A stretch of 64,000 bases of DNA from Octopus sinensis (lineage: Eukaryota), in NCBI RefSeq assembly GCF_006345805.1, contig NC_043008.1:31682001-31746000 (forward strand). The letters are read 5' to 3'. A model generated the notes under the pieces. The model saw only the letters and a list, made by a program, of their open reading frames with translations. It did no database searches and was not told where the DNA came from. Position numbers and translations under genes: made by a program. Below are positions 12,775-61,149 of this stretch, one piece after another. Every line of letters starts with the position of its first letter. The stretch's first letter is position 1.

Positions 12775-13095
12775 CTTAAATTAGAAATAAGCCACAAATG
12801 ATTCAAACCTTTTGACACCAACCTGCATGCAACCACTTCTGGTTCTAAGATACAAACTTCCAGTTTTAAAGCAATCTAAAGCAAAACCTTGACATCAGTA
12901 TTTCATGTTTGTTTATGTTACAAACACTGGCTTAATAATGACAAAGTTATTGTACTAAATTCTTCATTGTTTTGAAAATTGATTGAAACAAAAGATAGTG
13001 CATTCCAACAGAAATATTGTAATAAAAGGACCAATTCATGTGAAAAGTATTTAAATCCCTGCATCTGCAAAGATTAACAAATGCATTCACTTTAC

Positions 13096-13137
<42 letters not shown>

Positions 13138-14702: not shown

Positions 14703-15392
14703 TAGTTGCAAAATAAGTTTCTTAATCCTTTATCAATCAGATTACTCTGTCAAATGCAATGCTTAATTATTCTCATTCTTTTCAATTAATCATGTGTTAT
14801 CTCAGAGCTTCAGGATTTCAATGATACTACTGTTTATTTCTAGACTGACATTACATTGTAAGCTAGGAATAAGAGGTTGGATCCAGCCAGTATGAATATA
14901 AAACAGGTAAAATAATTTGACCAAATATGTCTGGTTTAAATGCTAAATAGTTAAACCATACAACCATGTTGGTGCTTATCAATCCTAAATCTTTTGGACC
15001 AGCATTACAACTAACTGAACAGTGCTTCCACTTCTCACAATAGAACACTGTATCTAGCTTTGCACCTATTTACAACTACCCAGATTAACGCAGACTGTGT
15101 TTATGTTGGCAATGGACAGTCTGTAGTATTGTTTGTGTTATCTTTTAGTTAATAGTTCACGAGCCCTTTTGTAGTTATCACTTACTTATTTTAGTCATTG
15201 AACTGCAGCATTGCTGGGGTACTGCCTTGAAGAACATTGTGGGGAAAAAAATCAACCCCACTATTTCATTTTAAGTCTTGTGTTTATTCTATAGAAACTT
15301 TTGCTAAACTGCTAGGTTACTGGGATTAAACAAACCATCACCAATTGTCAACAAGTGAGTTGGGGTGGGGGGCACAAACACACACACACATG

Positions 15393-15423: not shown

Positions 15424-15819
15424 GATGGGCTTCTACACAGTTTCCATCTACCAAATTCACTCACAAGGCATTAGTTAGCTCAAGGCTATAGTAGAAGACA
15501 CTCACCCAAAGTACCATGCAGTAGGACTGAACTCTAAATCTTGAGGCTGCAAAGTGAGCTACTTAACCTTATAGCTATGCCTGCACCTTTATCTTCTAGA
15601 ATTAAGTAAAAACCCTCAAATAAAACTTTACAAAATTTTAACAAAAACACGAACACATTGGATAATGCAATCCTAGAAAAATAAGATGGAATGGTCATAG
15701 CTGGAACACTTTGACCACATGTCTACTTGCTTCATGTTGACCCAGGATTAAACAACAACAACAGCAACAACAGTAACAACAGCTGCAGACAAACAAATAC
15801 AACCCATCATTCCTCTTAC

Positions 15820-15959
15820 CTGCAGTACGGAAACAGAGATTCATTAAAAGTGCCACAGCATATTCCAGTGTATAATCAGAGACTAAATCATATTCTTCCA
15901 AAAGACTGATTAACCATTCCACAAGATCAACATTAATCATCAAACTCTGGAAGTTACGC
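15820..15959 (-). CDS. ARMC9: ARMC9 coding exon 14: RNFQSLMINVDLVEWLISLLEEYDLVSDYTLEYAVALLMNLCFRTA(G)
   Basis: atcag acceptor, gtaaga donor, 140 nt; signature SDYTLEY.VALLMNLC; within ORF 15695-15982. Confidence 0.97.
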
Positions 15960-20400: not shown

Positions 20401-21642
20401 TCATTTATGTCCATACCCTGCACACAAGCTGTCCCTTACAAACCTCTCCCCATAACAACCCATCTTCCAGACACTGCCCTCTATTGCCCCACCTGAGCTT
20501 ACCACTCACTTATTCTTCTCCCTTCTATCTCCCACTCTCCTTTGCACCTTCATGAACCTGTCTGCACACAATGCATCCCTGTTGAATTTCTTCCCCCACA
20601 ACACATCCTCCTAACACCCCCTCCCTCAATTTGTGTTCACTCATTGCATTCTCTCCCCTCCACCTCTCACTCTTTCACAATCTCACTAAGTTACCCACCA
20701 CCTGATCACCTTATCCAGTCCTTGGTCCCACTTACATACACCCCTCTATAACTCAAGTGGACCCCCCCTCCTTCCAATCACATTTTCATCATCTCTCCAT
20801 GCTCTCTCTTTCCATCTCTCTCTCTCTCTCTCCAGATGAAGTAGCCGTCCATCTCCCTTATAGCAAGACACCTATTTCTGTCCCACTTTTCATACCCTGA
20901 TCCAGTGGTTCCCAAAGTGGGCAGTACTGATTCCCAAGGAGCAGTGGAAAGATTGGGATGGATGTAAAAACAACAAAATAATAGGTTGATTAGGTTAAGT
21001 TTTATTTGTGAAATACAGTTGTTTTGAATTTGTGGCAGAAAGGGGTTTTTCTTTGTGATAGAGAGTGGTGAGGGACAGGCACTAGGAATGTGGCCTGGGT
21101 GCCAAAGGGATGGGAACTATTGCACAGACTTCTCATCACCAGGCATAATGTCACTTGCATTGAAACTACTTCCCCTCATTTGAGGGATCTCCTCTTATAA
21201 GTTACTTTGTGACCTCACCAGTGCAGATGCCGAGTAAAAACACCCACTCCACTCTGTAGCATGCTTGGCATTAGGAAGAGGATCCAGCCATAGAAACCAT
21301 GCCAAAGCAAAGAGTTGGGCTTGGTGCAGTCTTCTGACTTGCCAGTTCCTGTCAAACTGACCAACACTTGGAAAACAGATGAGGATGAGGATACATGCAT
21401 AAGCATATATGCATCTATTTGTCCATTAATTAAAGTATGAACTGTATGTGAAATTTAGGCTTCTCTCCTTATAATCTAAATATGTTGGCCTTAAAGATTA
21501 TTTTAGTTGCTTATGTATATACATGCATGTCAGTCTCGCATGGATCTTAACTATCACAGATTTATTCATTGATGTCTATACATCAACTCTCAGTCAGAAA
21601 CATGTATGTGTCGAGTTGGCAGAAACTTGAGTTGGCATCAAA

Positions 21643-21855
21643 TTGGCAGAAACGTTAGCACGCCGGGCGAAATGCTTAGCAGTATTTCATCTGTCGCTAC
21701 GTTCTGAGTTCAAATTCCGTTTAGGTCGACTTTGCTTTTCATCCTTTCGGGGTCGATTAAATAAGTACCAGTTATGCACTGGGGTCGATATAATCGACTT
21801 AATCCGTTTGTCTGTCCTTATTTGTCCCCTCTGTGGGAACAGTAAAGAAATGAGA
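21643..21855 (+). mobile_element. tRNA-derived SINE family 2 (ggcggcgagctggcagaaacgttagcacgc head), long-tail subfamily; other family-2 copies at ~3130-3335, 7190-7350(-), 8885-9085, 33835-34050, 38867-39100(-), 54300-56152(- split), 59350-61100(- split), 62670-62890
   Basis: A-box tggcagaa, B-box gagttcaaattcc, ctttgcctttcatcctttcggggtcgat body. Confidence 0.85.
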
Positions 21856-22091
21856 AATATGTATGTGTGTGTGCATGTGTGTATGTACATATGTGTGTAT
21901 ATGTGTTTGTGACTGTATGTATGTATGCATGTGAGTATATGTGTATGTGTGTATGTATATATATGTGTAGGAGTATGTATGTAATAAGTGTACAGAGTTT
22001 AGAGTAAACAAGAAGGGAAAAAGAGAGTACTCAATACAGAGAGTAGCCAAATGTATCTATTAAAGATGAAATTTCAGAATTCTAGACTCAC

Positions 22092-24762: not shown

Positions 24763-26681
24763 TAGAAAGATACATAACAATCTCCTCAGTAAGAACATTG
24801 ACAAATTACTCATCAGGATAGACTTTGCCACATTCCAGAAAATAACAATAAATCATCATTCACTATCTTTGTTTTAACATCCACTTTTCCATGCTTGCAC
24901 GAGTTGGACACAGTTTACTGAGACAGATTTTTTTCTATGGCTGGATGCCTTTCCTCTTGCCAACCATTGCTTGTTTCCAAAGATGATAATATTTCTCCAT
25001 AGTCAGACATGTTCCTGCAGAATATTGAAAATGACTGACATTGCTTGAAGAACAGTAACAATCACTTACAATTATCACATGATGTCAAGACAAAGAGACA
25101 AACATACACATATTCACACGCACACATATATTTACATATAACCCATGGCAACAGGAACATGGACATTAAATGATGATGATGATGATATGTGTGTCATGTG
25201 CCATCAGTAATTACTCAGGGTAGGCAGTTGGTGTGTAGTAACACACACAAAAAATAAGCGAAACACAGGCGCGTGACTGAGTTGTGGGCAGATTTACTTC
25301 TGCCTTTATAGTGTGTAAAGAAAACGTTGTAGGAATGTACACAGCACATGTACTACAGCAGTTGTATGCATAGCTTTAATACTGAGATTGAAAGGCAGGG
25401 GCAAATCATGCCTACCTAATCAACAAAAAAATAAAATATTTTGTATTTTATGCATAGTTATCAGAGTAACCTTCATAATTTTATTGAATTAGGTACATAT
25501 TTTGCCATAAAAGGAAAATATTACTATCAATCTATTTTATTCTGGGTAGGCACTGCTTACCTTGCCTACCCAGATGGCACATCCCTGATATATATATGTA
25601 TATATATATATGCACTCTAGGAAACTTATATGGTTAAGGTAATGCATTCAGAATTATCCAACGGAATATATCCTAAATTCTTATAAGAATATTATTGGAT
25701 TTATATATTAACTGTTGAATAACCTATTTTGAATACCTAACTGAGAGTGAACTGGTAAACGTTTGGGTAATCCTTTACTATTTACAATATATATATATAT
25801 ATGTTTGATATATATATATATATATATATATTTATATCAAACAAAGTGAATGAGTGCTCAGCCAATGTATTGGTGGATAAAGATTCTTTATTTGTGTATG
25901 AAGGCTACTATTGGTTTCTTGTTAAGGAAAACTTCAACAATTATTCAAGCCTATCATATAGAAAACTAGCGTTTGTCTTCATTTCGGATTGAAACATGAA
26001 AAGCCACAGAAAGTCACAATACAATTATGCAAGAATTTCAGTAAACAAAAACAAAATATTAAGGGGAGTAACTCTTGAATTATTATCTCCCTTGAATCCG
26101 ATTTTTCAGAAAATTGAAATACTAATATTTTTGTATACGCATATCTGCACTAATATTAAACAGCACGGAATTTTGTAATTTTAAAATTTGTACACTTAAA
26201 ATTTACATTTACATGTATGAGCGCCTGGTTGCCAAATGTTTATCACAAGTTTTGGCATCAAAATTTTGCAGTCTTTGTAATTTCATATACATAATTTATA
26301 CATACAGACATATGCACACACACACACAAACATACATATAAAAGTTAAAAAGTAAAGTTGTTCATGGCAGGATTTGAACTCAGAATGTAAAGAGCCTGAA
26401 GAAATACAAATCATTTTGTCCAATGTGCTAATAATTTTGCCAGCTTACTGCATTAACAACAACAATAATAGGCAACAGGAAATATTCTGCACAGAACAAT
26501 AGATTTGATTGTCAGTTGCCTGCCCTAGACCATATGAATATGTCGCTGACTGCTGATGATAGGAGCAAGAGTAATGAGGGAGCCTTGTAGCTACATGTTG
26601 AGAAGGATTCTTTGAGGTTTGAATAATTCATCCCTGGAAACATGAATGTTTCATTCATTATCCTTAAACATTATCCTTATA

Positions 26682-26846
26682 GGCATAGGAGTGGTTGTGT
26701 GGTAAGTAGCTTGCTTACCAACCACATGGTTCCAGGTTCAATCCCACTGTGTGGCACCTTGGGCAAGTGTCTTCTGCTATAGCCTCAGGCCAACAAAAGC
26801 CTTTTGAGTGGATTTGGTAGACAGAAACTGAAAGAATCCCATCGTA

Positions 26847-26921
<75 letters not shown>

Positions 26922-27145
26922 GTGTGTATGTGTTTGTGAGTTTGTGTTTGTCCCCCCAACATCACTTGACAACAATGGTGGTGTGTTTACGTCCCCGTAA
27001 CTTAGCAGTTTGGCAAAAGAGACCAATAGAATAAGTACTAGGCTTACAAAGAATAAGTCCTGGGGTCGATTTGCTCGTCTAAAAGGTGGTGCTCCAGTAT
27101 GGCCATAGTCACATGACTGAAACGAGTAAAAGAGTAGAAGAGTAA
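26682..27145 (+). mobile_element. SINE family 1, full length
   Basis: Same head, core, (TA)n and tail as 1311-1722. Confidence 0.85.
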
Positions 27146-28103: not shown

Positions 28104-28437
28104 GTTGGCCAGAAGAACCACTATTAACCATCTTACTAACAATAACTCTGAGCACCTTTTCAAACTCCACCTGTCTAACACCTGTGGACATGTTTACAAA
28201 GTCAGAAAACAGCACAGCTCCCATGATTTTCAGAAACATTTTTTCACGCTAAGAGTTGCTGAAGCATGGAACAAACTGCCGGCATCAGTTGTTAGTTGTC
28301 GGAGCACTGCATCCTTCAAAACTTCCATGCTTCTTGAGATTCGCCAACATTACACCTGATTTTCTCCCCTCCATACACACACAAGCAAGTTATGGTGCAC
28401 CTGAGCACTGTATACAATAATTTCATTATTATTATTT
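28104..28437 (+). mobile_element. 3' fragment of the same CR1 family
   Basis: INHLTNNNSEHLF...FFTLRVAEAWNKLPASVV closely matches 37.76-38.06 kb, including the 3'UTR gcacctgagcactgta and TTA tail. Confidence 0.9.
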
Positions 28438-33133: not shown

Positions 33134-34146
33134 CTAAACATAGTTAAGGTGTGAATAAGGAAACTAAATAATAGAAGTCAGATATACACAACAGTATTTT
33201 ATGGAGCAGATACTTTCCTTTACTGAGGGAAATGATCTTGCATGGATCTGGCTGTGGTCACCAAACAAATAAAAGAACTAAAAAAAACTTTTAGTCATTT
33301 GAATGTAGCCATACTAAGGTACCACCTTCACAGTTTTAGTTAATTATATATCCACCTAGATATTTCATCTAGTACTCATTTTATCACTTTCAGTTTATTG
33401 ATTGGATAAGTACTCATTGGTATAAAGAGATGTAATCATCTGCCTGTATGTACACACTAGCATGCATATATCATGTGATCACGTGACCGACCAGGCTAAC
33501 ACACACATATATATATATATATGAGATGAGATTCAGGACAGCTTCTGTCCAGTCAAATCAAGGTTAAGGTAGAAGACATTAACACAAAGTGCTATACAGT
33601 GTGACTGAACAAGAAATGGAGTATCCACAATTAAGTAGATGTTCTCAACTAAATTTTATAAAGAAGATTACAAGTAAATTTTGTAAAGTAGAAGATTATA
33701 AGTAAATCTATATTGCCTAATAAATCTTATAAACATGATGGCCTCATGTAAATTTCATGTAAGAAATACTCAAGAGACACCAAACCTATCGAAAAGAAAT
33801 CAAAGTTCTTTTATTATTGAAGTAGAGACAAAGGTGGAAAGCTGGCAGAATTGTTAACTCACGGGGCAAAATGGTTAGTAACATTTTGTCAAGCTTTACA
33901 TTCTGAGTTCAAATTCTGCTGAGGGTGACTTTGCCTTTCATCCTTTCAGGGTCAATAAAATTAGTACCAGTTAAGCATTGGTGTTGATATAATTGACTTA
34001 TCCCCTCCCACCAAAACTGCTGGTCTTATGCCAAAATTTGAAGCTATTATTAAAATAGAGACATCGAGATGTACACAAGTAAAATTTTTAATGACCTCAA
34101 CAAATGAAAGTAGAAAAGAAAATATTTGACATCAAGAAAAAGATAC

Positions 34147-35682: not shown

Positions 35683-35721
<39 letters not shown>

Positions 35722-38065
35722 CAAGTAGTCACCTCTCCAACAAGAGGCGACAACACCTTGGACCTGCTCTTCACCACAACTCCTGAAGCGGTTATCAATT
35801 GCACTACGGAGGAACCTCTAGGTGACTCTGATCATGCTATGATCATCGCCAATCTGGCTCTTGCGGGCAACAAACACCTGAACCATCTCCAATCTGCTTC
35901 CTTCGATTGGAAGAGAGCAGATTGGAACCTGTACCACACTGAACTACAGCACCCAAACTGGCGTGAATTCTACAACTCTGGAGATGTGAATACTATACTC
36001 CAGAGTATCCTGGACTCAATATGGGCAGCATGTGCAGCATCAGTGCCACGTAAACAAAAAAAGAAGAACCGCCCCAAAAGGGCAATTTGGGAAACTTCAG
36101 CGGTCCGACTTGCCAGGAAGGAACGTCGGACTGCTGAACAGGAATACAAGTTGCATAAATCAGACACCAACAGGAAGAAGCGGAATAAATCCTCCAACCA
36201 TCTCAAGCAAGTGACAAAAAATGCAGTGCTTGAACTGTTCAATGCTTTGAACAGTGCATAGCAGCCAATCCTGACAGCAAGGTTTTCTGGAAATATGTGC
36301 ATTCAAAGCAGAGACCTCACTCTCCAGTGGGCCCTCTTCGCAACCCTCACACGAACCAGATCACTGACGACCCCAAGGAATGCGCAGAACTCATTGCCGA
36401 GTGCTATGCAAACATATTCACTGTCGAAAGTCAAAATGTACCATCTTCACCATCACTAACAGCAAACTCCATAACAACTATGGAATTTACACCTGCAATG
36501 CTGCGATGTCACCTTCAAAATAAGCACAACTATGCCTCCCCTGGTCTTGATGGCATTACGTACATGCTTCTCAAACGTGGCAGGCACTTCCTTTTACACC
36601 AGCTTTCTATTTTTTTCCAGTACTGTCTCAACAATGGTGCTACTCCGGAGCAGTGGAAAACTGCCAGTGTCATTCCTCTGTTCAAAAAGGGTGACCGCAC
36701 ATCACCTGTCAACTATTGCCCAGTCAGTCTCACTAGCTGTATTGCAAAACTGATGGAATCGTGTGTCAGAGAAACACTCTGGAACTTCTGGAGCTCTCAC
36801 AGTCTCATCCGACCCTCACAATATGGATTTGTCCCTAACTCCAGCTGCAGTGACCAGCTTGTCGAGTTTCTTGAGGACATTACTCAGATCACTGACAGTG
36901 GCTCATGGGTGGATGTTGTCTACCTTGACTTTGCTAAGGCTTTCAACTCTGTGCCACACAAAAGGCTTATGGTGAAACTCTCTGCAATGGGTGTGGGGGA
37001 TGACCTTTTTAACTGGTTGAAATCCTTCATCCTCAGCCGAAAGGAGGTAGTCACAGTTCTAGGACAGCACTCTACACCATATGAGATGTCATCGGGTGTA
37101 CCACAGGGATCTGTCCTTGGTCCCCTCCTGTTTGTGGCATACATTAATGACATAGATGCCAATTTAAAGAATGCCACAGTATTGAAATATGCAGACGACA
37201 TCAAGCTGTACCTTGAAATCAAGAGGACTGATCCTGATGTCTACAACTCTTTCCTGCAATCAGACCTAGACACAATGCAGCAATGGATCACAGACTGTCA
37301 ACTGAAACTGGCTGTGGACAAGTGTACCACCATGCATTTTGGGAGAAAAAACCCTGCGTCCACATACTCCCTTCACAACACTGATATCAAGAAATCCTCT
37401 TGCGAGCGTGACCTAGGCATCACTGTCAGCAGTGATTTGCGTTGGACAAAGCATATCTCTAAAATTGTCAAGAAGGCCGAGGGTGTCTTGGCATCACTCA
37501 GCAAGACTTTTGTTAGCCGCTCTCCAGCCATCTATTTAAAACTGTATACAGCTATGGTACGACCACACTTGGAATTCGCATCATCAGTTTGGAATCCCTA
37601 TCTTGCTCAGAACATTGACCTCCTGGAATCTGTCCAGAGACGTGCAACCAAACGCATACCCTCCATCAGACACCTACCATATTCTGAGCGCCTTGTTTCC
37701 CTGGGCATGGATTCACTGAAGCTCCGGCGTCTGGCGACGGACTTGGTAAACACCCACAAGGTTATCAACCACCTCACTAACAACAACACTGAACACCTTT
37801 TTGATCTCCATGTGTCTAACACACGTGGACATGCCTACAAAGTCAGAAAACAGCACAGCTCCCATGACTTTCGGAAACATTTTTTCACGCTCAGGGTTGC
37901 TGAAGCGTGGAATAAACTGCCTGCATCAGTTGTTGACTGCCATGACACTGCATCCTTTAAGGCCCTCATGCTTCCCGAAATCCGTCGAAACTACACCTGA
38001 TTATATATACACTTTAGATGAGTTGTAGTGCACCTGAGCACTGTACACAATTATTATTATTATAT

Positions 38066-38370: not shown

Positions 38371-39746
38371 GTCCTTGATATTTAGCACCAAATCACCCCA
38401 ATCCAGAAAATCAGTTATCAAATAGGCATAGGTATGGCTGTGTGGTTAAGAAGTTCACTTTGTGACCACACTGTTTCAGGTTCAGTCCCACTACACAGCA
38501 CCTTGGGTATCCAAAGTGATACCCAAAGAGGGACTGACCCTGACACTACATAATATAAAACAAACCTTTTAAACCAAACAGCCATGTCTGTTAATCTAGA
38601 TTATAAAGATGAGATTAATAGCCAAAAATGTATCGTATCTTTTATTTGTGTCAGTCAGTGAACTACAACCATGCTGGAGCACCAGTTTGAAGGGTTTAGT
38701 CAAACAAACTGAAACCAGTCCTGTTTTAAGTCTGGTGCTTATTCTATTGGTTCCTTTGCAAAAACAATTAAGCTACGTGGACAGAAACAAACCATCACTG
38801 GTTATCAAACAGTGGGGGTATAAACACAAACACACACACACACACAATAAGCTTCTACACAATTTCTTATTTCTTTATTACCCACAAGGGGTTAAACATA
38901 GAGGGGACAAACAAGGACAGACAAAGGGATTAAGTCAATTACATCGACCCCAGCACGTAACTGGTACTTAATTTATTGACCCCAAAAGGATGAAAGGCAA
39001 AGTCAACCTCGGTGGAATTTGAACTCAGAATGGAACGGCAGATGAAATACTACTAAGCATTGCACCCGGCATGCTAATGTTTCTGCCAGCTCGCCACCTT
39101 TCAGGTTCGGTCATCTTCTCCAGGCCTCAAAGAATGTCGGCGCAGAACGCCACCATGTTCTACACAGTTTCTGTCAACCAAATGCTACACAGTCAACCAA
39201 ATTCACTCACAAAGTATTGGTCAACTTAGGATTATAGAAAGCACTTGCTCAAGGTGCTACACAGTGGGACTGAACCCAAAATATGTGGTTGCAAAACAAG
39301 CTTCTTAATGACACAGCCATGCCTGAGATTTAATAGTCTGAAAGGTATTATCTATATGAGAAAATAAAAGTGAAAGAAAAAGACTGGCACTCCATCGGTT
39401 ATGGCAACAAGGACACCAGTTGATTCAATCAATGGAAGAGCTCATTTGAGAAATTAACATGCAAGTGGTTGAACACTCCACAGACACATGTACCCTTAAT
39501 GTAGTTTTCAGGGAGATTCAATGTGACACAGAATGTAACAAGGGTAGCCCTTTGGATTATAGGTACAACTCATTTTTGCCAGCTTAGAAGACTGAAGCAA
39601 TGTAGAATAAAGTGTTTTGCTGAAGGACACAAGCACCCCTAGGAATTGAACACATGATCATACAATTGTGAGCCAAATACCCTAACCACTAGGTCACGTG
39701 CCTTCACATGAGAAAAATAACTCACCTGAGTACTGTACACATTTAA

Positions 39747-42460: not shown

Positions 42461-42770
42461 TACATGCATACGTATGTATATATATATGTATGTGTGTATG
42501 TGTAAACCCTAATCTAGACAACACATGATGGTCATAAATGAGCATCATCATTTAAGTGAGATTGTTTGTTTCCAGTCATTTGCAAAAGACATTTCTATAT
42601 ACATGGGAAAACACTATCTTGCTTGGAAACTAGTAAAGGTTGGAAAAAGAAGTGGCACCCAGCTGTAGAAAATCTGCCTCAACAAATTCCATCTGATACA
42701 TGCTAGCTGGGAAAAGTGGACATATGATGATGATGATGATGATGATACAGATTTCAGGAGCACTTCTTAC

Positions 42771-42941
42771 TTTTGTTGGTAATTTGTGACGCATCGGATA
42801 AACAGCAAAATGAATCCATAGTGTAAACTCCAGTTTCTTAGCAACCATGTCAGTACTGCGAATATCTTGAGGAATATTTGTATTCCACTCACGCAGAAAA
42901 TCTTTCCTTTTCCCTAAATCAAAATATTCAAGGATATTTTT
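42771..42941 (-). CDS. ARMC9: ARMC9 coding exon 3: KNILEYFDLG...KKLEFTLWIHFAVYPMRHKLPTK
   Basis: Polypyrimidine tract + gcag acceptor, gtaaga donor, 171 nt; within ORF 42630-42962. Confidence 0.95.
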
Positions 42942-43413
42942 CTGCAAAAAAAAGAAAAACAAAACATGTTCATATTTATATAGAATAAAAGTATATTTGA
43001 TTATACATGTACCAGCTCAATTGAAACACTGCCTACAGCTGCTCTTCATTTAGGCAGTTGAAGCTGGAGTTCAGGTAGGAAGTCAACTTGAGTAATATCT
43101 ATATATACATCATCAAATGTAAGATAACGTGAAATTTATATATATATATATATATATATATAAACAATTTATAAGTAAAGGCAAAAGAAAAAAATTCTAA
43201 TGCCAAAATATGCCGTACTCTGATGCTTCAATCAATTTGTCATTTGTCTTTAAAAAGGAAGTACACATTAGATAATGAATCATGGATATATTAAGTTTCA
43301 ATAAAAGATGGAATGGTTACAACTGGGATGGTTACAACATGGGGGTTATCAACAGAACTGGTCTGGAGCTACACAATCACAACAACAATATTAATAAAGG
43401 ATAAAATAATTAC

Positions 43414-46599: not shown

Positions 46600-47915
46600 C
46601 CTCATCATTTAATGTCTGTTGTCCATGCTGGCATGGGTTGGATGGTTTGACCAGGGATGGCAAGCTGGAAGGCTGCAACAGACTCCAGTTTGATTTGGCA
46701 TGCTTTCTATGGCTGGATGCCCTTCCTAATGCCAACCACTCTGAGAATGTAATGGGTGCTTTTGTGTGCTACTAACACAGGTGTAATTTGCATGACACCA
46801 GTATCATGCCACAACTATGATTTTACTTGACTTGATGGGTCATCTTCTCAAGCACAGTATAATGTCAAAGGTCTCAGTCATTGCCTCCATGAGGTCCAAC
46901 ACTTGAAAGGTGCTTTACACATGCCACCAGCATCAGCCATCTTGCCTCCATGAGGCCCAACACTCAAAAAGTGCATTTTATGTGCCAGTTACATGCCACT
47001 AGTATTGGACACGACCATGATTTCACTTGGCTTGCCGGGTCTTCTCAAGCACAGCATATTGCCAAAGATATCAGTCACTAGTCATTGCCTCTGAGAGGCC
47101 CAAATTTTGAAGATCATGCTTCACTCCCTCGTCCCATGTCTTCCTGGGTCTACCTCTACCACAGGTTCCCTTCACAGTTAAAGATCAGCACTTCTTTACA
47201 CGGCTGTCCTTGTCCATGCACATCACATGACCACACCAGCACAGTCGTCTCTCTTGCACACCACATCTGATGCCTTTTATTCCAACTTTTCTCTCAAACA
47301 TGCACACTGACATTGCACATCCAGTGAAGCATACTGGTTTCATTTCTTTCAAGCTTATGCATGTCCTCAGCTGTCTCAGCCCATGTTCCACTGCCACGTA
47401 GCAGAGCTGTTTGCACACAGGCATCATACAATCTGCCTTTCATTCTAAGGGAGAGGCCCTTTGTTGCCAGAAAAGGTAGGAGCTCTCTGAACTTTGCCCA
47501 GCCTATCCTTATTCCCACAGCTACACTCTCAGAGCATCCACCTCTACTACTAACTTGGTCACCCAGATAACAGGATCCATCTACTACCTCTAGCTTACAC
47601 CCCTCGCATTTCAAGGAGTCTATTTTCTGTACATGTTCTGTGTTTATTGTACCTGTACATCTTCCACACACGAAAACTATTTTCCTTGTTAACCTTCCTC
47701 TGATATTGCTGCATCTCATACATGTCCACAGCTTACATTGGGTACATCTTATGGAGTTTCTACCTACACCTTTTCTACAGATTGAAAAGGAACATCTTGT
47801 GATTTGTCTGCCTTCCTACTTACTAAGACTCTGGTTTTTGCTAGGATAACTTGAAGGCCCTTTGATTCTAGAACTTGCTTCCATACCTGAAACTTTTCTA
47901 GTTCTGGCAGTGATT
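46600..47915 (-). mobile_element. 5'-truncated RTE-clade LINE remnant with 3' tail
   Basis: WKQVLESKGLQVILAKTRV, YLGDQV...GWAKFRELLP...KGRLYDACV, RRLCWCGHVMCM (RTE C-terminus); many disruptions. Confidence 0.85.
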
Positions 47916-50252: not shown

Positions 50253-51650
50253 CTAATAAGATCTGCTCATTGCTTATTTCTATTTTGATGCATATATTTA
50301 CACATTTACAAGATTGTTTTATTTTAAAAACTTGGATTATACCTTCAATTTTGTTCTATACTTAAAAGTTGCTTAAAGCCAATCACTTGAAACTGTTTCA
50401 TGTAGAAAATTTGAACTATGTCTCTGATTTTGTTCCACAGTTAAGGTGTTGTAAAGCATAATCTCCAGATGCTGTAACCAGTGGAATATTGTAGATAATA
50501 GATTTTTGCATACCTACACAAGTGTTCCACCTGCCACACACCAACTCACAGAAAAATGGGTATTTTTTAATGAAATTTTCTACAAATACATTTCAGATGG
50601 CATAAATGATGATTATAAATGATGAATTTAAAGAGCAAAAAAATAAATAAATAATAATAATAACTGGTGGACACACACACACATACATAATGACACACAA
50701 CATACAATTTTTTCAAAATTTCAAGTAACATTTTGTTGATATATATATTCATTTGATGTGTCAGTTTGTATGTTTAGGTGTGCACAACATTTTGTTTTGC
50801 TTTTACATCAAATCCCAATATTATTGTAATATACTGTAGATAAAAGATATTTGTAGAAAATTTCATTGCAAAAAAAAAAAAATAATAAAATTCATTATTC
50901 TGAAAGTTATGAGGAAACAAAATCAGGGTGGGTGCCTACTTGTGTAGGTATGCTACAATATCTTGTGACAAGTGTAATGAATGAGAACACATACAGATAT
51001 AAACCACAAAATGATGAGATAATGTTGACAAATTTAACAGTGGATGACAGGCGTAAAATCAAGTTGACACCTTCTGAGATTCTCTCCCTTGTTTATTGCT
51101 AACAGACGTCCATTACACTTTAAACGTTTACCACATTCACCTGACTCAATAACTGTGTTACAATCTTCTATGTAGAAATTTTATTTGCTAGAAATAGTAG
51201 TTCAATCTCCCTATATTAAGTACATTCACCTTACTAAATAACCATTTGACACAAGCCTCTATGTAGTATTTCTACATGTTAGAAATAGTAGTCCAATCTT
51301 CTACCATCTTAAATAAAGGCTAAACTGGGGCTATACAATGACAATAACAAAAACGTCGGTGGTATTTTTTTGTATCATCCTAAATTACTCATTTCTCTCA
51401 CAAGAAGCATGAATGAATAATTATAGACATCCACTTTGCAATTACAAGGTGCTAAGTTCAATTCCAATGAATGGTATGTTGAATAAGTTTTGTGAGTGAA
51501 AGTGAATAGACAGAAAGTGAGATGACTTTTATTAGGTTTGCCCAGATTTGCTATATCATTATCATGCTGGGTTGTCATCTGAGAACTGTTCACACACTCT
51601 CTAATTCAATAAACAGTTTAAGTGATCAAACAACTAAAAAAAAAATCATA

Positions 51651-52065
51651 GGCGCAGGAGTGGTTGTGTGGTAAGTAGCTTACTTTCAAACCACATGGTT
51701 CCGGGTTCCGTCCCACTCCGTGGCATCTTGGGCAAGTGTCTTCTACTATATCCTCGGGCCAACCAAAGCCTTATGAGTGGATTTGGTAGACGGAAACTGA
51801 AAGAAGCCCATCGTATATATGTATATATATGCGTGTGTATGTGTGTATGTTTGTGTTTCTGTGTTTGTCCCCCTGGCATTGCTTGACAACCGATGCTGGT
51901 GTGTTTATGTCCCCGTCACTTAGCGGTTCGGCAAAAGAGACCGATAGAATAAGTACTGGGCTTAGAAAGAATAAGTCCCGGGGTCAATTTGCTCGACTAA
52001 AGGTGGTGCTGCAGCATGGCCACAGTCAAATGACTGAAACAAATAAAAGAGTAAAAGAGTAAAGA
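51651..52065 (+). mobile_element. SINE family 1, full length, young; further copies at ~4330-4735(+), 9435-9810(+), 15190-15580(-), 17775-18155(+), 43710-44150(+), 44270-44730(+) and partial ones elsewhere
   Basis: ggcgcaggagtggttgtgtggtaag head, CpGs retained. Confidence 0.85.
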
Positions 52066-54112: not shown

Positions 54113-54499
54113 CACTAATTTTTACCAAGGATCAGTAATAAAGAGCACACAGAGGTTTCTTTGGCTTGATAAATATGTCTTCAGTTAAAAAGGTATACAA
54201 TAGAGAAACGAGTGTCTTCATTTAAAAGCATTTAATATGCAAAAGGATTCAATACTGATAATAAATCAAAGAGAGCTGCATTGTACAATAGTACCAATAT
54301 TCTTTTCTATTCTAGGCACAAGGCCCGAAATTTTGGGGGAGGGGGTCATTCAATTAGATTGACCCCAGTATGCAACTGGTACTTAATTTATCGGCCCCGA
54401 AAGGATGAAAGGCAAAATCAATCTCAGCGGAATTTGAACTCAGAACGTAAAGACAGACGAAATACCGCTAAGCATTTCACCCGGCCTGCTAATGTTTCT

Positions 54500-56120
54500 A
54501 ATTTTTTTTACTACCCACTACAGGGCAAACATAGAGGGAACAACATACATGTGGTGACACACAAACAGAGAAAAAAGTTAGAAGCAACATACGAAGAATG
54601 ACATGGAAAGTGAAATGAAAAATGGAATGAAACCACTATGCCCCACTTCATAGCAGCTTCATTTATACCTTTTAAACTTCATTCCCACTAGAAGATCAAT
54701 TTCGAATTCTTCCACCACTTCCTCATATGTCATATACTGTGGTAATACATCCCAGTCCAATTTGACCTCCCAACACCTATATCCACTTTTAAATCTTTTT
54801 TTTCTGTTCATCTGAGCACAGCGTACAACAGTGCCATCCCTTTATGTTGTCAAAACTCGTTGTTCCAACTGTTTTAAAGTCTTCCCAAGATAACACTTCT
54901 TTACACAGTTTTTCATTTGAGTACTCATACATTACTGCATGGCATTTTTTTTTCCTCTTTGTTTGTCTGGAGGGAGGTAGTTTGGGAGTTCTGTTTGTAC
55001 ATTTTTCTGTGTCAGAGAGGGATGGGCAGGTTTGGTGTTTGTAGGGGGTAGGGTGGGTCGAAGAGGGTGTTGGGTGGTTATGGGCTTAATTTTTTCCTTT
55101 TTCCTATTGTTTCCCATTTGTTCTCTGTTTCTTTCTTCTCTTCTTCTGTTGATATCTTTTCTTGCTCTTTCTGGGTCTCTTCCTCTTGTATCTCCATCTT
55201 TTTGGTCTTTGAAGGGCAATCTGATCTGATGTGGCCTTTCAGGTCACATTTAAAGCATCTAGGGATTTTGACCCCCCACCCTGACCCTCATTATCACGCT
55301 GTCCATACTTATTGTTTTTGTAATGTTTTCTAGGATTTCAATTGAACCTAGAATAATCATGTCCAGTATATGTCCCTTCCATATAACACTGTGTGTTTTT
55401 GTGGCCTGGAGAATCACTATATTGTCCTCATTTCCCAGAAGGACAGCAGCTGCTATCCAGGCCACATCTATCTCTGGCAGAATTCCCTCCACTCTAATTC
55501 TGGTCGCATGTTATTCACAGTAAGTGGGCAAAAGCACCACTTCCTCACTCTTAATAGTAGTTGCTGTGTGCTTTTCTGCTGTTGCCACATCCTCTTGCAA
55601 GGTACACAATTTCATGCCATATTGGTCCTAACGCCTTCTCCACTTCACCCATGGTCACGACATCAATTTTTCCTTTAATTATTGAAAATGTCTTGTACGA
55701 AATTGTCCTTTCTTTGATATCATTAAGCATCTCATGCGGTTGCGGGGAGGGGCAACTTAACGTCAAATCCATCCTGACTTAACAATTTTTGTAATTTTCA
55801 AACTCACCGATATTGACATCATTTTCCTGGCATTTTGCCATGTCCGCAAAGTTTCTCTTTTCTTCGTTTAATTTATTGTCCATTTTCTTGACCGTTTTCA
55901 AAAATTCTTCCTCTGAAGATGACATATCTGAAAAGCTGAAGTCTTCTTCAGACATCTTTTTCTTTAAGCCGACCCTAATCTATGAGGAGGGGAATCACAA
56001 ACGAATAGCTGCAAAGCAGCACAAAAACAATTTACAGAGGGTCAAAAAACACTGACACAAAATTACAACGACACTAACACAGTGAAGATTACTGCAAAAA
56101 CAACTTACAGACACTGAGTA
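54500..56120 (-). mobile_element. ORF1-only (Gag-like CCHC) non-LTR retroelement copy A, decayed; L1/Tx1-ORF1-like
   Basis: ATG at 55955 (MSEEDFSFSDMSSSEEEF...), RIRVEGILPEIDVAWIAAAV, knuckle CFKCDLKGHIRSDC at 55216-55257, several stops/frameshifts, A-rich 3' end, TSD gcctgctaatgtttct (54484-54499) / gcgtgctgacgtttct (56121-56136). Confidence 0.8.
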
Positions 56121-56169
56121 GCGTGCTGACGTTTCTGCCAGCTCACCGCCTTACAATAGTATCAATATT

Positions 56170-57492: not shown

Positions 57493-59533
57493 TAGTTAAA
57501 CAAAAATATTTCTTCAGTTTTAAACAGTCATTTCGCTCTTGAATTTAGTATTAATCCCGCTACAAGGCTTTAATACAAGCTTAAATGGTATTTTTTTCTT
57601 TCTTTCTTTCTTTTTTTTTTGTTAACCGTTATTTTATTAATTATTGAGATATATTGTGCTTTGCAAGCGATATGATTTGCGGTCATGTGTAGGAGCGATG
57701 ATGCTCACACCGTATGAGACTTGAAACACACTCGTACACACACGAAGAGCCTAAACTAAGATTATTTTTCTTTAATAACGATGCTGATTATAGGATATCA
57801 AAATCTGCCACTGACCATGTATGACTAAATCACTAGACATCTTTTTACACCACTATATCGTCTCATCGTATCTTTCCATATTTTCTAAGAGTTGCGTCCC
57901 TTAAATTAATGAATTATATTTATTTCATTCTTTAACTATTTTGATATCAACCCGTCCAAAACTTCGCGTTTTAAAATGATCAAAATTAAAGACTTAACGA
58001 GGACAAAATTATTTCACTAAATTTTCCATTTTTTTATATAATTAAAACAAAGTGTTTCAATAGGAATATACCAACGAAAGAGCTAGAACTTTAGGCAGCG
58101 TATCATCAGCTTTTTCAAAGTTTCATTGCTATGCACACACACAAAAAAGTGAGGATTGAAACCGTTTTAAAAAATAGATGCATGTATTGCATTTAATCCA
58201 CAAAAGAGCATACATGTATTGTGGTGAATTAAAACTACTTAAGATTTCTGAATATCATGGCTGTCTTTCACTCGCCCCTGAAATCCGCGGTACAGCTATG
58301 GTCAATACATAGTAGTAGGGTTGAAAATGTCGACTCTAGGGCGATGGGTTGGTAAAACTGTAGACAAAATGGTTTGTGATTGTTACACTTCTTTATGCTC
58401 GGATTAAAATCCGTCTAGGATCGACTCTTGTCTTTTTCTTCTCGGCGTTGATAAAGCATGTACTAACGAAAAACTGCGCCTATGTTTAAAAATCAATACT
58501 CTTAGAGTGTCAGATTACCGGAGTGTCGAACAAAACGATTTGTAGTGTTTAGTTACACCTAAGTTCAAATCCTACAAAGGCTAGTTTAGTGTTTATCCTT
58601 CCAGGAGTCGATAAAGTAAACATTAGTCAAGTTCTAAGCCCAGTTTTATCGACTACAGCTTTTTCTAAAAAGTGAGTGACCTTATACTCATTTTAGGATT
58701 AGGATTGTTAATCATCACTTCTGAATAACTTGAACAAACTCATTCAATTTTGAAACATTTACATAATAATAATATCGTTTTTAGTTAATCTCGGATTTTT
58801 AAAGTTAGAAATTATAGTAAAACGCAGCACTAATAAATGTTATTGGTTTCTCGAGAATTTTCACTTTCTTAAATGTATTTTTAAAGACAAATCAATGTTT
58901 CAAACTCTAATATTATCATTAAAAAGAAATAATGGTAGTAGTAGCTAAACAAATTATCTTTCAATGAAAATGTTCAAATAAACTAATTGCTAAAAAAAAA
59001 AATTTTAATATGTACTATGTTCTAACCATTTCAGCTGCCTAAATCATGTTCACACTAAAACTTCACATCCAGGGATTCAATACACACCATAAATATTAAT
59101 CAATATTAAAATATTAATCAATAGTGGCAAAATTATTCCTAAACTCTTAGTATCGACGAGAACAATTTCAACGGTGACTGAGCAAATCTATGATATAAGG
59201 CATTCCAGCCATGACCACCAGGACATAATCTGATACGTTCTTCCTTCTTTAAAACAAAAGAAAAAGGGCGTTTTGAAGGAGAAAATTTGGTTTAGTACAA
59301 CGGAACACAGAAATGCTGCATGATGGGAGATATAGAATCGTCGAATGGTTTCAAATTTTGGCACATAGCCAGCAATTTTCGAGATTGAAGTAAGTTGATT
59401 ACACAGACTCCAGTGTTCAACTGCTACGTATTTTATGAGCTCCAAAGGATGAAAGGCATAGTCGACATCGGCAGAATTTGAATTCAAAACGTGAAGACGG
59501 GCGAAATTCTTCGCGTGCTAATGATTCTGCCAG

Positions 59534-61067
59534 AGTTTCTTTATTTCCCATAAAGAGTACACACAGAAATTGGCACAACGCATGTGGAAGACATTAAAAA
59601 ATTACACAGACAAATAAATAAATATAAAAATTAAAAGCGTATGATATACATGCATGATAACAATGAAATGAATATGAAATTGAACTATTTGCCCCACCAA
59701 GCAGTCTCATTTCTTCCCTTTACCATTTATGAGGTGTCTCCCTTAATATATAGACTCAATGCTGCTTTATTAAGTCTTTGTACTTCAAACTATACGGTGA
59801 CTTTTTAATGTCCGTGTACAGCCTCCAATATATGACTCCTTTTTTATAATTGGATATCACATCCTTTTGGCTTTGAGTTACCAGTACACACAATTGCAAG
59901 CCTATAATGTTTATGAATCCCTCCATGTTCACGAATTTCGCCTTTTTCCACCTCCTAATCTCACAAATCAAATCCTCTTCTGTCAACAAACAATAATTCT
60001 CACGGGGAGGGAGCTTTTGTAAATCCTGTGATGTCTGTTTGCTTTCTTTTTTCTTTTTGTTTTGTAAAGTAGGGGAATGGGTGGATTTGGTGTCTGCAGG
60101 TAGAAGGTGGGACTGAGTGGGTGTGGGAGGGATGGGACGGTTTGGGGTTTCATCTCGTTCTCTCCTTTCTTTCTCTTTTTCCCAGCTACTGTCCATACTT
60201 CCTCCTTACTCTGCGCTTCCTCCAGTATCTCCTGAATTTTTTCTGGCTCATTTTCCTCTTTTTCTGTTGCTTTCTGTGTGATACAGTGTGCCATAATGTG
60301 GCCTTTCTGGTCACATTTAAATTAACGAGGGACTCTTCCCTCCACCCACACTCTTAGAATCGTCTCTCCGATCGACACCGTTTCTACGAGTCCTTCCAGA
60401 GTTTCCACTTCCGCTTGAACAATTAGGTCTAGCGTCTTGCCTTTCCATTTTGTTCCTTCTATTTCTGTGGCCTGAATGACGGCCACCTCTTCCTTATTTC
60501 CGAGGACCGCTGCCGCAACCCAAACCACATCTATATCTGGTGGGATTCCTTCTACCCTAATCTTGGAAGTCTTTTTTCCAAGATAAGTGGGTAGAAGGAC
60601 CACTTTATCTGTTCTTGCCGTAGTCACTGCCTGTTGCCTTGCCACTTCCTCTATCCTAAAATGGATTACACCACGATCTTTTTTTTCCATTTCCTCTATC
60701 TTCTTGAGTGGTGACAACTTAACGTCATCCCACTCTCTATGCGCCATTTTACCGTCTTTGTCAATATTTGCTAAGCCCATCTCTCTTCTTTTTTTCTTTT
60801 GTCACTTCTGCGAAGTTCTTTTTACCTAATACTTTGTCCATCTTATTCACCGCCATTGTTAGTTCTTTATCTGAAGAGGACAACTCAATGCTACTAAGGT
60901 CTGAGTAAAACATTACTTCTGCCATTATCCTGGCTAACTCTCCTTAAAGCGGAAAGAAAGCACCTCTAGCAAAACCACTGCAAAGCAGCGCAAAAACAAT
61001 TTACAAAGTGTTAAAAAAACACTGGCACAAAATTACAACTGTAAAAATAACTTACAAACACTCAACG
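59534..61067 (-). mobile_element. ORF1-only (Gag-like CCHC) non-LTR retroelement copy B, decayed; related to copy A
   Basis: ATG at 60925, KIRVEGIPPDIDVVWVAAAV, knuckle *FKCDQKGHIMAHC at 60283-60324 (first Cys is now TAA), 3' AATAAAGAAA, TSD gcgtgctaatgattctgccag (59513-59533) / gcgtggtatcgattctgccag (61068-61088). Confidence 0.8.
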
Positions 61068-61149
61068 GCGTGGTATCGATTCTGCCAGCTCGCCGCCTTA
61101 GACTAGTCGAATATATATTGGCTATATCTTTGTAATTCAGTATCTCTTT

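What the first reader, a model, noticed from the sequence alone, without database searches (positions are those of the whole stretch)
38867..38945. A SINE subfamily shares its 3' tail with the ORF1-only elements that parasitise its head
Seen: the long-tail family-2 SINE end (tttattacccacaaggggttaaacatagaggggacaa, 38875-38911; similar at 21810-21855) aligns with the 3' end of copy A (tttactacccactacagggcaaacatagagggaacaa, from ~54507) and copy B (tttctttatttcccataaagagtacacacaga). Other family-2 copies carry a different tail. Established: SINEs borrow the 3' end of their partner LINE for recognition by its RT. Inference: SINE, ORF1-only element and an unseen autonomous LINE form a three-way system, in which one RT/endonuclease both mobilises the SINE and cuts it as a target.
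Basis: partly seen in the sequence, partly recalled or inferred. Interest (0 to 1): 0.7.

Follow-up and report, generated by a model that had tools for sequence, protein, structure and literature searches.

The report
Octopus SINE borrows a LINE tail
A minority subfamily of an abundant octopus SINE ends in the same roughly 75-base tail as an L1/Tx1-like retrotransposon clade whose short ORF1-only members insert at one fixed spot in that SINE's head: a real and neat, but mostly textbook-type, parasite-of-a-parasite arrangement.

Summary
The tail of the SINE copy at 39101-38862 (minus strand) matches the 3' end of "copy A" at 30 of 37 bases. No dinucleotide shuffle out of 2000 scored as well. 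The match to "copy B" is weaker but significant. Eight of ten other copies of this SINE family carry an unrelated tail.

Using relatives of the ORF1 protein I fetched two Octopus sinensis loci:
- **L001** holds a third ORF1-only element, with an uninterrupted 384-aa ORF. It sits at the same spot in a SINE head and carries the same tail. L001 also holds two more long-tail SINEs.
- **L002** holds a full LINE with a homologous ORF1 and an ORF2 that has endonuclease, reverse-transcriptase and zf-RVT domains. Its 3' end aligns with the SINE tail (0 of 3000 shuffles).

So the "unseen" RT-encoding LINE clade exists, although the direct partner was not found.

The claim that one enzyme both moves the SINE and cuts its head is only partly supported. 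ORF1-only elements sit in SINE heads in 3 of 3 cases, long-tail SINEs in 0 of 4. Two of the four SINE insertions do share the AGAAAC junction motif.

I rate this a new variant of known kinds (SINE/LINE tail sharing, HAL1-like elements, Tx1-like target specificity), of moderate interest.

The parts
38862..38935 (-). Long 3' tail of SINE copy 'SINE38' (ctttgtctgtccttgtttgtcccctctatgtttaaccccttgtgggtaataaagaaataagaaat). This is the feature in the finding.
   Evidence: Homologous to the 3' ends of copies A, B and C and of the L002 LINE.
38936..39101 (-). Head and body of SINE38, a family-2 SINE with a box-B-like gagttcaaattcc motif.
39098..39157 (-). 60-nt 5' extension carried in with SINE38, lying between the TSD and the SINE head. 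The boundary with the head is uncertain by about 4 nt.
39158..39172 (-). 5' copy of the SINE38 target-site duplication, AGAAACTGTGTAGAA. The target gacAGAAAC lies inside a family-1 SINE.
38853..38867 (-). 3' copy of the same duplication, AGAAATTGTGTAGAA. Its first 6 nt overlap the tail end, so the TSD is 9-15 nt.
21612..21858 (+). Second long-tail SINE copy ('SINE21'). The tail is 21806-21858 and has a 14-nt deletion.
21596..21611 (+). 5' TSD copy of SINE21, AGAAACATGTATGTGT. The 3' copy, AGAAATATGTATGTGT, is at 21853-21868.
54500..56120 (-). Copy A: a 1.6-kb ORF1-only LINE derivative with a broken ORF1 that carries a CCHC knuckle. Its 3' end (54500-54543) shares the tail.
56121..56136 (-). 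5' TSD copy of copy A, agaaacgtcagcacgc, inside the head of a standard-tail family-2 SINE. The 3' copy is at 54484-54499.
54297..54499 (-). Remainder of the host SINE interrupted by copy A. The head piece is at 56121-56157. The host's own TSD is aatattgRtactattgta.
59533..61067 (-). Copy B: an ORF1-only LINE derivative whose conceptual ORF is 37% identical at the amino-acid level to copy A's. Its 3' end is ...tgtgtgtactctttatgggaaataaagaaactc.
61068..61087 (-). 5' TSD copy of copy B, tggcagaatcgataccacgc, in a family-2 SINE head. The 3' copy is at 59513-59532, and the rest of the host SINE runs to about 59345.

Best explanation
The window is octopus DNA, lying in introns of an ARMC9-like gene.

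**What it is.** One abundant SINE family ("family 2") has a minority subfamily whose last 70-75 nt were captured from the 3' end of an L1/Tx1-like LINE clade. That clade has two kinds of member:
- Full elements with ORF1 and an ORF2 carrying APE endonuclease, RT and zf-RVT domains. One such element is seen in O. sinensis locus L002.
- A lineage of 1.6-kb non-autonomous derivatives that keep the 5' UTR, ORF1 and the 3' UTR but have no ORF2, as HAL1 does in mammals. These are copies A and B in the window and copy C in L001.

**How it most likely works (inferred).**
- The clade's reverse transcriptase recognises the shared tail. The tail consists of a short CCC-N5/6-GGG hairpin followed by (A)ATAAAGAAAT(N)AGAAAT.
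- It therefore copies its own RNA, the ORF1-only RNAs and the long-tail SINE RNA by target-primed reverse transcription.
- Priming is helped by pairing of the terminal AGAAAU with AGAAAC at the nick.

**Target choice (shown).** The ORF1-only lineage is site-specific for ...GGCAGAAAC^GTTAGCACGC(CG)^... in the family-2 SINE head. The SINE copies land more loosely.

**Consequence (inferred).** Target choice is not set by the tail alone. Either different members of the LINE clade serve the two passengers, or ORF1p or downstream read-through RNA adds the head specificity.
For: **Tail homology**
- SINE38 vs copy A: z 7.1, 0/2000 shuffles. SINE38 vs copy B: z 5.3.
- SINE38 vs copy C: z 10.4, 0/2000.
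- SINE38 vs the L002 LINE: z 8.1, 0/3000 shuffles, and 0/2931 random genomic 120-mers score as high.
- In every case the match lies at the extreme 3' end, in the same orientation.

**The SINE and its tail move as a unit**
- Four long-tail copies share the junction gacttaatcc|[cg]tttgtctg but have different flanks and TSDs. One of them is 5'-truncated.

**The ORF1-only elements belong to a LINE clade**
- An ORF1 profile finds 326 relatives, the top ones from Octopus and Argonauta.
- In L002 a homologous ORF1 is followed 30 nt later by an ORF2 starting MANLRIGCLNVRGL, with Exo_endo_phos, RVT_1 and zf-RVT domains.
- The only matches among solved structures are to human L1 ORF2p.

**ORF1-only structure**
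- It is seen three times: A, B, and C with a 384-aa open ORF.
- dN/dS between the ORF1 cores is 0.17-0.34.

**Site specificity**
- Three mutually diverged elements lie in independent host SINEs, each with its own TSD. All are at the same head position, with TSDs of 16, 20 and 12-19 nt.
- Only 6 of 33 CAGAAAC sites in 111 kb lie in such heads.

**Shared junction motif**
- SINE38, SINE21, copy A and copy C all have AGAAAC at the 3' junction.

**Precedent**
- Tx1-clade LINEs target other transposons and microsatellites and mobilise SINEs that share their targets (PMC4494074).
- HAL1 encodes only ORF1p (PMC5753468).
Against: - No intact autonomous LINE with this tail and this target was seen.
- The L002 ORF2 is broken into at least four frames, its ORF1 is only about 30-33% identical to copy C's, and it sits in (ATT)n.
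- Long-tail SINEs are in SINE heads in 0 of 4 cases, and 2 of 4 lack the AGAAAC motif.
- The sample is only 111 kb with 8 tail-bearing elements.
- The hairpin rests on 8 sequences read by eye, with one compensatory change and two broken pairs. Fold z-scores are weak, -1.2 to -1.75.
- The L1/Tx1 assignment rests on domain content and PDB hits, not on an RT phylogeny.
- tRNA ancestry of the SINE head was not detectable.
Confidence: 0.72

Rival explanations
1. Same machinery, RNA-guided homing. One autonomous LINE serves both passengers. The ORF1-only elements reach SINE heads because their transcripts read through into the downstream SINE sequence (gttagcacgcc...), which then pairs with other SINE heads at the nick. 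This is how R1 and R2 use co-transcribed rDNA. SINE RNAs end at their own tail and so land wherever AGAAAC or A/T-rich microhomology is available.
For: - In copy C the 3' "TSD" copy reads cagaaaTgttagc where the 5' copy reads cagaaaCgttagc. The T matches the element's own ...AGAAAT end, which suggests that this junction was templated by RNA.
- SINE38 and SINE21 show the same C-to-T difference.
- The 5' junctions of A, B and C fall within 2 nt of each other, while the 3' junctions vary by 4-8 nt.
- Co-transcription with the target is said to strengthen the specificity of other LINEs (PMC4494074).
Against: - No read-through transcript or intermediate was seen.
- Copies A and B show no C-to-T signature.
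- The idea rests on 3 elements.
- An endonuclease with sequence specificity, as in Tx1L or R1, explains the fixed site equally well.
Confidence: 0.15
2. Different partners. The long-tail SINE is mobilised by a non-site-specific member of the same LINE clade, of the L002 type, and has no functional link to the head-targeting ORF1-only lineage beyond common ancestry of the tail.
For: - Long-tail SINEs are in SINE heads in 0 of 4 cases, ORF1-only elements in 3 of 3.
- In L001 a long-tail and a standard-tail SINE re-used the same A/T-rich target, tattttatct.
- The L002 LINE has the tail but lies in (ATT)n.
Against: - The SINE tail is closer to the tails of copy C (z 10.4) and copy A than to the L002 tail. 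The L002 tail carries a 16-nt insert.
- The SINE tail ends ...AAAGAAATaAGAAAT, as does copy C's (...AAAGAAATcAGAAAT).
- 2 of 4 SINE insertions are at cAGAAAC, the motif of the head site.
Confidence: 0.1
3. There is no functional tail sharing. The similarity is either chance or convergence on a poly(A)-signal-like AATAAAG end in AT-rich DNA, or the "long tail" is just a 5'-truncated LINE fragment that landed next to a SINE.
For: - Part of the match is the generic AATAAAGAAA.
- SINE21 alone vs A or B is not significant.
Against: - Shuffle and genomic-background controls reject chance.
- The similarity covers non-repetitive blocks (ttgtcccctctatgttt; ccccttgtggg) and stays collinear over 50-90 nt.
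- Four SINE copies at unrelated loci share the identical body/tail junction, and TSDs enclose head plus tail. The tail was therefore retrotransposed as part of the SINE.
Confidence: 0.03

Closest known systems
SINE/LINE pairs with a common 3' tail ("stringent" recognition; e.g. eel UnaSINE1/UnaL2, tortoise Pol III SINE/CR1; Ohshima and Okada reviews, cited)
   Same: - The SINE's 3' end is homologous to the 3' end of a LINE clade that encodes RT.
- The match is terminal and collinear.
- The SINE copies have TSDs and show 5' truncation.
   Different: - Only a minority subfamily of the SINE carries this tail. The majority has another one.
- The closest tails belong to ORF1-only derivatives, not to an autonomous LINE.
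- Recognition of the tail by the RT is inferred, not tested.
HAL1 (half-L1) of mammals, a non-autonomous L1 derivative that encodes only ORF1p (PMC5753468)
   Same: - The layout is 5' UTR, ORF1 and 3' UTR, with no ORF2.
- There are several diverged copies, so the elements form a lineage and are not a one-off deletion.
- ORF1 has evolved under purifying selection (dN/dS 0.17-0.34).
   Different: - These elements are from an invertebrate (octopod).
- ORF1 is of the CCHC-knuckle type.
- The tail is specific and is not a plain poly(A) end.
- Insertion is site-specific, which is not a feature of HAL1.
Target-specific Tx1-clade LINEs and their SINEs: Tx1L in Tx1D, Tx1-Mar in Mariner-N4_AMi together with SINEU, Keno in U2, Kibi/Koshi in microsatellites (PMC4494074)
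   Same: - The LINE is APE-type and of the L1 superfamily, and inserts at a fixed site in another abundant repeat. A relative (L002) lies in a microsatellite.
- A SINE appears to depend on the clade.
- Tandem SINE insertions and 5' extensions occur here too.
   Different: - The target here is the head of a SINE, and a subfamily of that same SINE family uses the clade's tail.
- The SINE does not share the strict target: 0 of 4 copies are in SINE heads, whereas SINEU-3 is 90% in its target.
- Tx1 membership was not tested by RT phylogeny.
R2-derived SIDEs and other internally deleted site-specific LINE derivatives (own knowledge: Eickbush and Eickbush 2012)
   Same: They are non-autonomous deletion derivatives that keep the parent's 3' end and its site specificity.
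   Different: - SIDEs retain no ORF.
- Their parents use a restriction-like endonuclease and target rDNA.

Membership tests
SINE/LINE common-tail pair | The 3' end of the SINE is homologous to the 3' end of the LINE. | tested here: met
   SINE38 tail vs copy A z 7.1, copy B z 5.3, copy C z 10.4, L002 LINE z 8.1. No shuffle, or at most one, reaches the observed score.
SINE/LINE common-tail pair | The partner LINE encodes RT and endonuclease and was active at the same time as the SINE. | tested here: inconclusive
   L002 has ORF1 plus an ORF2 with Exo_endo_phos, RVT_1 and zf-RVT. However, the ORF2 is broken and the element is a diverged relative. No intact, closely matching partner was available, and ages were not compared.
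SINE/LINE common-tail pair | The RT recognises the tail, shown by a retrotransposition assay. | not testable with these tools
   This needs an experiment.
SINE/LINE common-tail pair | SINE and LINE share TSD length and target features. | tested here: inconclusive
   TSDs are 9-16 nt for the SINEs and 12-20 nt for the ORF1-only elements. AGAAAC is at the junction in 2/4 SINEs and in 2/3 elements (the third has AGAATC nearby). SINE-head targeting is 0/4 for SINEs against 3/3 for elements.
tRNA-derived SINE (SINE2) | The head is recognisably derived from a tRNA, with A and B boxes. | tested here: not met
   ARAGORN finds no tRNA in the window and Rfam finds no tRNA match in SINE38. Only a box-B-like gagttcaaattcc motif is visible by eye. 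The element is a short, abundant, TSD-flanked repeat, so calling it a SINE is safe, but its tRNA ancestry was not shown.
L1/Tx1-type LINE | ORF2 has an N-terminal APE endonuclease, an RT and a C-terminal zinc-binding domain. | tested here: met
   L002 has Exo_endo_phos (E 7e-8), RVT_1 (E 2e-10) and zf-RVT (E 2e-7) in that order. The only PDB sequence hits are to human L1 ORF2p (E 3e-7).
L1/Tx1-type LINE | The RT groups with the Tx1 or L1 clade in a phylogeny. | not tested
   No reference RT set was available offline. L1-Tx1 is listed among the recently active LINE groups of O. vulgaris (PMC13282606).
L1/Tx1-type LINE | ORF1p is a nucleic-acid-binding protein with an RRM and a CCHC knuckle. | tested here: inconclusive
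   The CCHC knuckle reaches Pfam's threshold in relatives: P0121 scores 23.7 bits against a cut-off of 20.8, and copy A scores 20.7. The AF2 model shows a ferredoxin-like beta-alpha-beta-beta-alpha-beta domain (pLDDT 81-90), but no PDB match is better than E 0.07. RRMs appear among the weak hits.
HAL1-like ORF1-only LINE derivative | The element contains ORF1 and LINE UTRs but no ORF2. | tested here: met
   Copies A, B and C are 1.54-1.62 kb. ORF1 is followed by about 200-330 nt of 3' UTR, and no RT or EN similarity is present.
HAL1-like ORF1-only LINE derivative | Its ORF1 is homologous to the ORF1 of an autonomous LINE. | tested here: met
   P0146, the ORF1 of the L002 LINE, matches copy C at 33% identity over 227 aa in tblastn (E 1e-34) and scores E 2.8e-19 against the A/B ORF1 profile.
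Site-specific LINE | Independent insertions occur at the same position of the same target sequence. | tested here: met
   Three diverged elements lie in three host SINEs that have different TSDs of their own. All 5' junctions fall after CACGC(CG) and all 3' junctions within GGCAGAAAC. With n = 3, a genome-wide count is still needed.

The most novel reading that the evidence does not exclude
A long-lived ORF1-only retrotransposon lineage has specialised in homing to the head of the genome's most abundant SINE family. ORF1 has been kept under purifying selection while the copies diverged to about 40-55% amino-acid identity in the ORF1 core. A subfamily of that same SINE has stolen the lineage's tail. 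The result is a reciprocal three-level parasitism of autonomous LINE, ORF1-only hyperparasite and SINE. In this reading target choice is supplied not by the tail or the RT alone but by ORF1p or by read-through RNA, because the tail-sharing SINE does not home.
Probability: 0.25. Interest if true: 0.7.

Novelty: new variant of a known kind. Interest (0 to 1): 0.5.

Why it matters
Octopus genomes are about 12% SINE and 13% LINE (PMC13282606), and which LINE drives which SINE there is largely undescribed.

This locus names a concrete partner clade for one SINE subfamily. It also shows a HAL1-like ORF1-only lineage outside mammals, and it adds a SINE head to the list of repeats targeted by site-specific L1/Tx1-like elements.

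The contrast between strict homing of the ORF1-only elements and loose insertion of the SINE that carries the same tail gives a natural experiment. It can help separate what the 3' tail contributes (RT recognition) from what sets the target site (endonuclease, ORF1p or RNA pairing).

None of the individual mechanisms would surprise a transposon specialist. The combination is new as far as the searched literature shows.

Tried and rejected
**Searches that found nothing or little**
- A word-indexed protein search with the conceptual copy B ORF1 found nothing. The exhaustive profile search then found 326 relatives.
- A second indexed search with a 16-sequence profile returned only 4 proteins. This limited the genomic look-ups to two loci, because P0271 and P0272 are not on record.
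- Two scans of JGI metagenome contigs, one for the tail and one for the tail/SINE-head junction, found nothing.

**Candidates ruled out**
- The RT-bearing LINE inside the window (35701-38030, CR1-like) was checked as a candidate partner and rejected because its 3' end is unrelated. Its homologues in the protein database are not from octopus assemblies.

**Tests that were inconclusive**
- tRNA ancestry of the SINE head was not detectable with ARAGORN or Rfam.
- A MAFFT alignment of eight tail ends misplaced the hairpin arms, so I made no formal covariation count. The hairpin is read by eye only.
- The AF2 model of P0122 and the Foldseek search against the PDB gave no significant match.

**Idea tested and rejected**
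- I first thought the (TG)n after both long-tail SINEs in the window was part of the SINE tail. For SINE38 it belongs to the central microsatellite of the family-1 SINE into which SINE38 inserted.
Full report
**1. What is at the coordinates**

The window is AT-rich animal DNA full of short repeats. It carries exons of an ARMC9-like gene on the minus strand.

The region 38862-39101, read on the minus strand, is one copy of an abundant SINE, here called "family 2". blastn finds at least 11 copies in the window. Its last 74 nt, 38935 to 38862, read ctttgtctgtccttgtttgtcccctctatgtttaaccccttgtgggtaataaagaaataagaaat.

A second copy at 21612-21858 on the plus strand has the same tail with a 14-nt deletion. 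The other eight alignable copies diverge from the two long-tail copies just after ...gtaattgactta and end in ...ccaaaattgctggccttgtgccaaaatttgaaaccaat.

**2. Copies A and B**

Both elements lie on the minus strand and are about 1.6 kb long: copy A runs from 56120 to 54500 and copy B from about 61067 to 59533.
- They share a 62-nt 5' UTR block at 90% identity, and a conceptual ORF of about 400 aa at 37% identity.
- Copy A's ORF has a CCHC knuckle.
- Neither element has any RT or endonuclease similarity.
- Each interrupts the head of a standard-tail family-2 SINE at the same place, with duplications of the SINE sequence. Copy A duplicates agaaacgtcagcacgc (16 nt) and copy B tggcagaatcgataccacgc (20 nt).
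- The host SINEs have different TSDs of their own, so these are independent events.

**3. Is the tail similarity more than chance?**

Yes.

| Comparison | Result |
|---|---|
| SINE38 tail vs copy A end | 30/37 ungapped; score 39 vs 17.9 +/- 3.0; 0/2000 shuffles |
| SINE38 tail vs copy B end | 1/2000 shuffles |
| TTGTCCCCTCTATGTTT, up to 2 mismatches, in the window | only these two ends; 0.02 expected |

All matches lie at the extreme 3' end of the elements, in the same orientation.

**4. Bringing in relatives**

A word-indexed protein search found nothing. An exhaustive profile search with the A/B ORF1 alignment found 326 proteins. The best are from Octopus bimaculoides, O. sinensis, O. vulgaris and Argonauta hians. 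Two of them could be traced to O. sinensis chromosomes.

*Locus L001.*
- Copy C (9458-11062) is again 1.6 kb and ORF1-only, with an uninterrupted 384-aa ORF.
- It sits in a family-2 SINE head at the same position. The 5' junction reads ...gctggCAGAAACGTTAGCACGCCG|tgtttgac and the 3' junction ...ggataaataaagaaat|CAGAAATGTTAGCACGCCGggcg.
- Its tail matches the SINE38 tail with z 10.4.
- L001 also holds two more long-tail SINEs. One is 5'-truncated (6004-6166). The other is full-length with a 10-nt TSD (18014-18231).

*Locus L002.*
- It holds a complete LINE at about 9789-15345. P0146, a homologous ORF1, is 33% identical to copy C's over 227 aa.
- About 30 nt downstream an ORF2 begins MANLRIGCLNVRGL. 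It carries Exo_endo_phos, RVT_1 and zf-RVT domains spread over four broken frames.
- The only matches among solved structures are to human L1 ORF2p.
- The last 115 nt of the element align collinearly with the SINE38 tail, with a 16-nt insert. The score is 47.5 against 18.8 +/- 3.6; 0/3000 shuffles and 0/2931 random genomic segments reach it.

Such a LINE clade exists. L002 itself, however, is a diverged, dead relative flanked by (ATT)n, not the direct partner.

**5. Direction of transfer and unit of transposition**

The tail is found across a LINE clade whose ORF1s have diverged to about 30% identity. Within the SINE family it marks only a minority subfamily: 2 of 11 copies in the window, and 2 of about 10 in L001. 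The parsimonious reading is that the SINE captured the LINE tail.

Four long-tail copies at unrelated sites share the same body/tail junction, and TSDs enclose head plus tail. The tail was therefore retrotransposed as part of the SINE and is not a neighbouring fragment.

**6. Target sites**

*ORF1-only elements.* All three are in family-2 heads. The 5' junctions fall within 2 nt of each other, after CACGC(CG). The 3' junctions fall inside GGCAGAAAC. Only 6 of 33 CAGAAAC heptamers in the 111 kb examined lie in such heads, and copy B's site reads CAGAATC. The specificity therefore goes beyond that motif.

*Long-tail SINEs.*

| Copy | Location | Junction | TSD |
|---|---|---|---|
| SINE38 | inside a family-1 SINE | gacAGAAAC\|TGTGTAGAA | 9-15 nt; a 60-nt 5' extension came in with it |
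| SINE21 | unique DNA | gtcAGAAAC\|ATGTATGTGT | 10-16 nt |
| L001 6004-6166 and 18014-18231 | sites with no AGAAAC (18014-18231 in A/T-rich DNA) | no AGAAAC | 5-8 nt (uncertain) and 10 nt |

- AGAAAC occurs about 5.5e-4 times per position (71 per 128 kb of both strands). Two junction hits in four insertions is therefore far above chance.
- In SINE38, SINE21 and copy C the 3' copy reads AGAAAT, which is the element's own end. This points to priming by pairing of the RNA's terminal AGAAAU with AGAAAC at the nick.
- Head targeting differs between the two groups: 0 of 4 SINEs against 3 of 3 ORF1-only elements. So "one enzyme moves the SINE and cuts it" is at best half the story.
- Standard-tail SINEs have 14-18-nt TSDs that begin with ATT.

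**7. Mechanism proposed**

*Shown:*
- The tail is homologous across the SINE subfamily, the ORF1-only elements and the L002 LINE.
- The elements have an ORF1-only layout and belong to a LINE clade.
- They insert at a fixed site in the SINE head.
- The AGAAAC/AGAAAT junctions are as described in section 6.

*Inferred:*
- The clade's RT recognises the tail, perhaps through the small CCC-N5/6-GGG hairpin just before AATAAAG. The hairpin is present in 6 of 8 tails. L002 has one G-C for C-G swap, and two copies have a broken pair. This was read by eye, and single-sequence folds give only weak support.
- That RT mobilises the SINE subfamily and the ORF1-only RNAs in trans.

*Speculative:*
- Head specificity comes from the partner's endonuclease, from ORF1p, or from read-through RNA.

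dN/dS of 0.17-0.34 between the ORF1 cores of A, B and C indicates that ORF1 was under selection while the lineage diversified.

**8. Comparison with known systems**

- SINE/LINE tail sharing is textbook knowledge.
- ORF1-only L1 derivatives are known as HAL1 (PMC5753468).
- Tx1-clade LINEs are known to target other transposons, snRNA genes and microsatellites, and to mobilise SINEs with the same target preference (PMC4494074).
- L1-Tx1 is among the recently active LINE groups in O. vulgaris (PMC13282606).
- I found no open-access paper that describes this tail, these ORF1-only elements or SINE-head targeting in cephalopods. Repbase could not be consulted.

**9. Verdict**

I rate it a new variant of known kinds and of moderate interest (0.5). 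The main limits are the tiny sample (111 kb, 8 tail-bearing elements) and the absence of the direct autonomous partner.

Noticed in passing
window 15698-15985 (-) and 42633-43016 (-): Exons of an ARMC9-like gene: ARMC9_ARM at E 1e-16 and CTLH_Armc9 at E 3e-15. The repeats studied here lie in its introns.
   Followed up: partly
window 35701-38030 (+): A 5'-truncated CR1-like LINE with the end of an endonuclease domain and RVT_1 (588-aa open frame), followed by (AT)n. Its 3' end is unrelated to the shared tail. A fragment of the same family lies at 28105-28356.
   Followed up: partly
window 39098-39157 (-): The SINE38 insertion includes a GC-rich 60-nt 5' extension between the TSD and the SINE head. 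It is unique within the 111 kb examined. It may be a 5' transduction or a template switch. SINEU-2, which is mobilised by Tx1, also shows 5' extensions.
   Followed up: partly
window 21612-21660 (+): The head of SINE21 is partly triplicated: cgagTTGGCAGAAAC, then ttgagttggcatcaaa, then TTGGCAGAAACgttagc. The break lies exactly at the hot spot used by the ORF1-only elements. It may be the scar of an abortive or extremely truncated insertion.
   Followed up: no
L001 18001-18472: A long-tail SINE and a standard-tail SINE lie in tandem, and the same 10-nt duplication, tattt[t/c]atct, is present three times. The same nick site was therefore re-used by SINEs with different tails.
   Followed up: no
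window 38638-39330 (-); also 26679-27133, 1320-1711, 51640-52050: A second SINE family ("family 1", about 450 nt) has an internal (TA)n(TG)n microsatellite. SINE38 is inserted just upstream of that microsatellite, at gacAGAAACtg.
   Followed up: partly
window 54297/56157, 3138-3340, 33830-34060; L001 9400-11270; L002 9727-9790 and 15345-15375: Standard-tail family-2 SINEs have 14-18-nt TSDs that begin with ATT, and the L002 LINE is flanked by (ATT)n on both sides. This hints at a common A/T-rich nick preference that differs from the AGAAAC junctions.
   Followed up: no
proteins P0123, P0141, P0254 (O. bimaculoides gene models): ORF1-like segments are fused in gene models to Helitron_like_N/PIF1, to C2H2 zinc fingers and to an SNF2 domain. 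These are probably chimeric annotations across nested transposons.
   Followed up: no
window 47297-47815 (-): A 173-aa cysteine-rich open frame (CxxC...CxxC motifs) has no significant Pfam match. It may be the C-terminal part of another retroelement.
   Followed up: no
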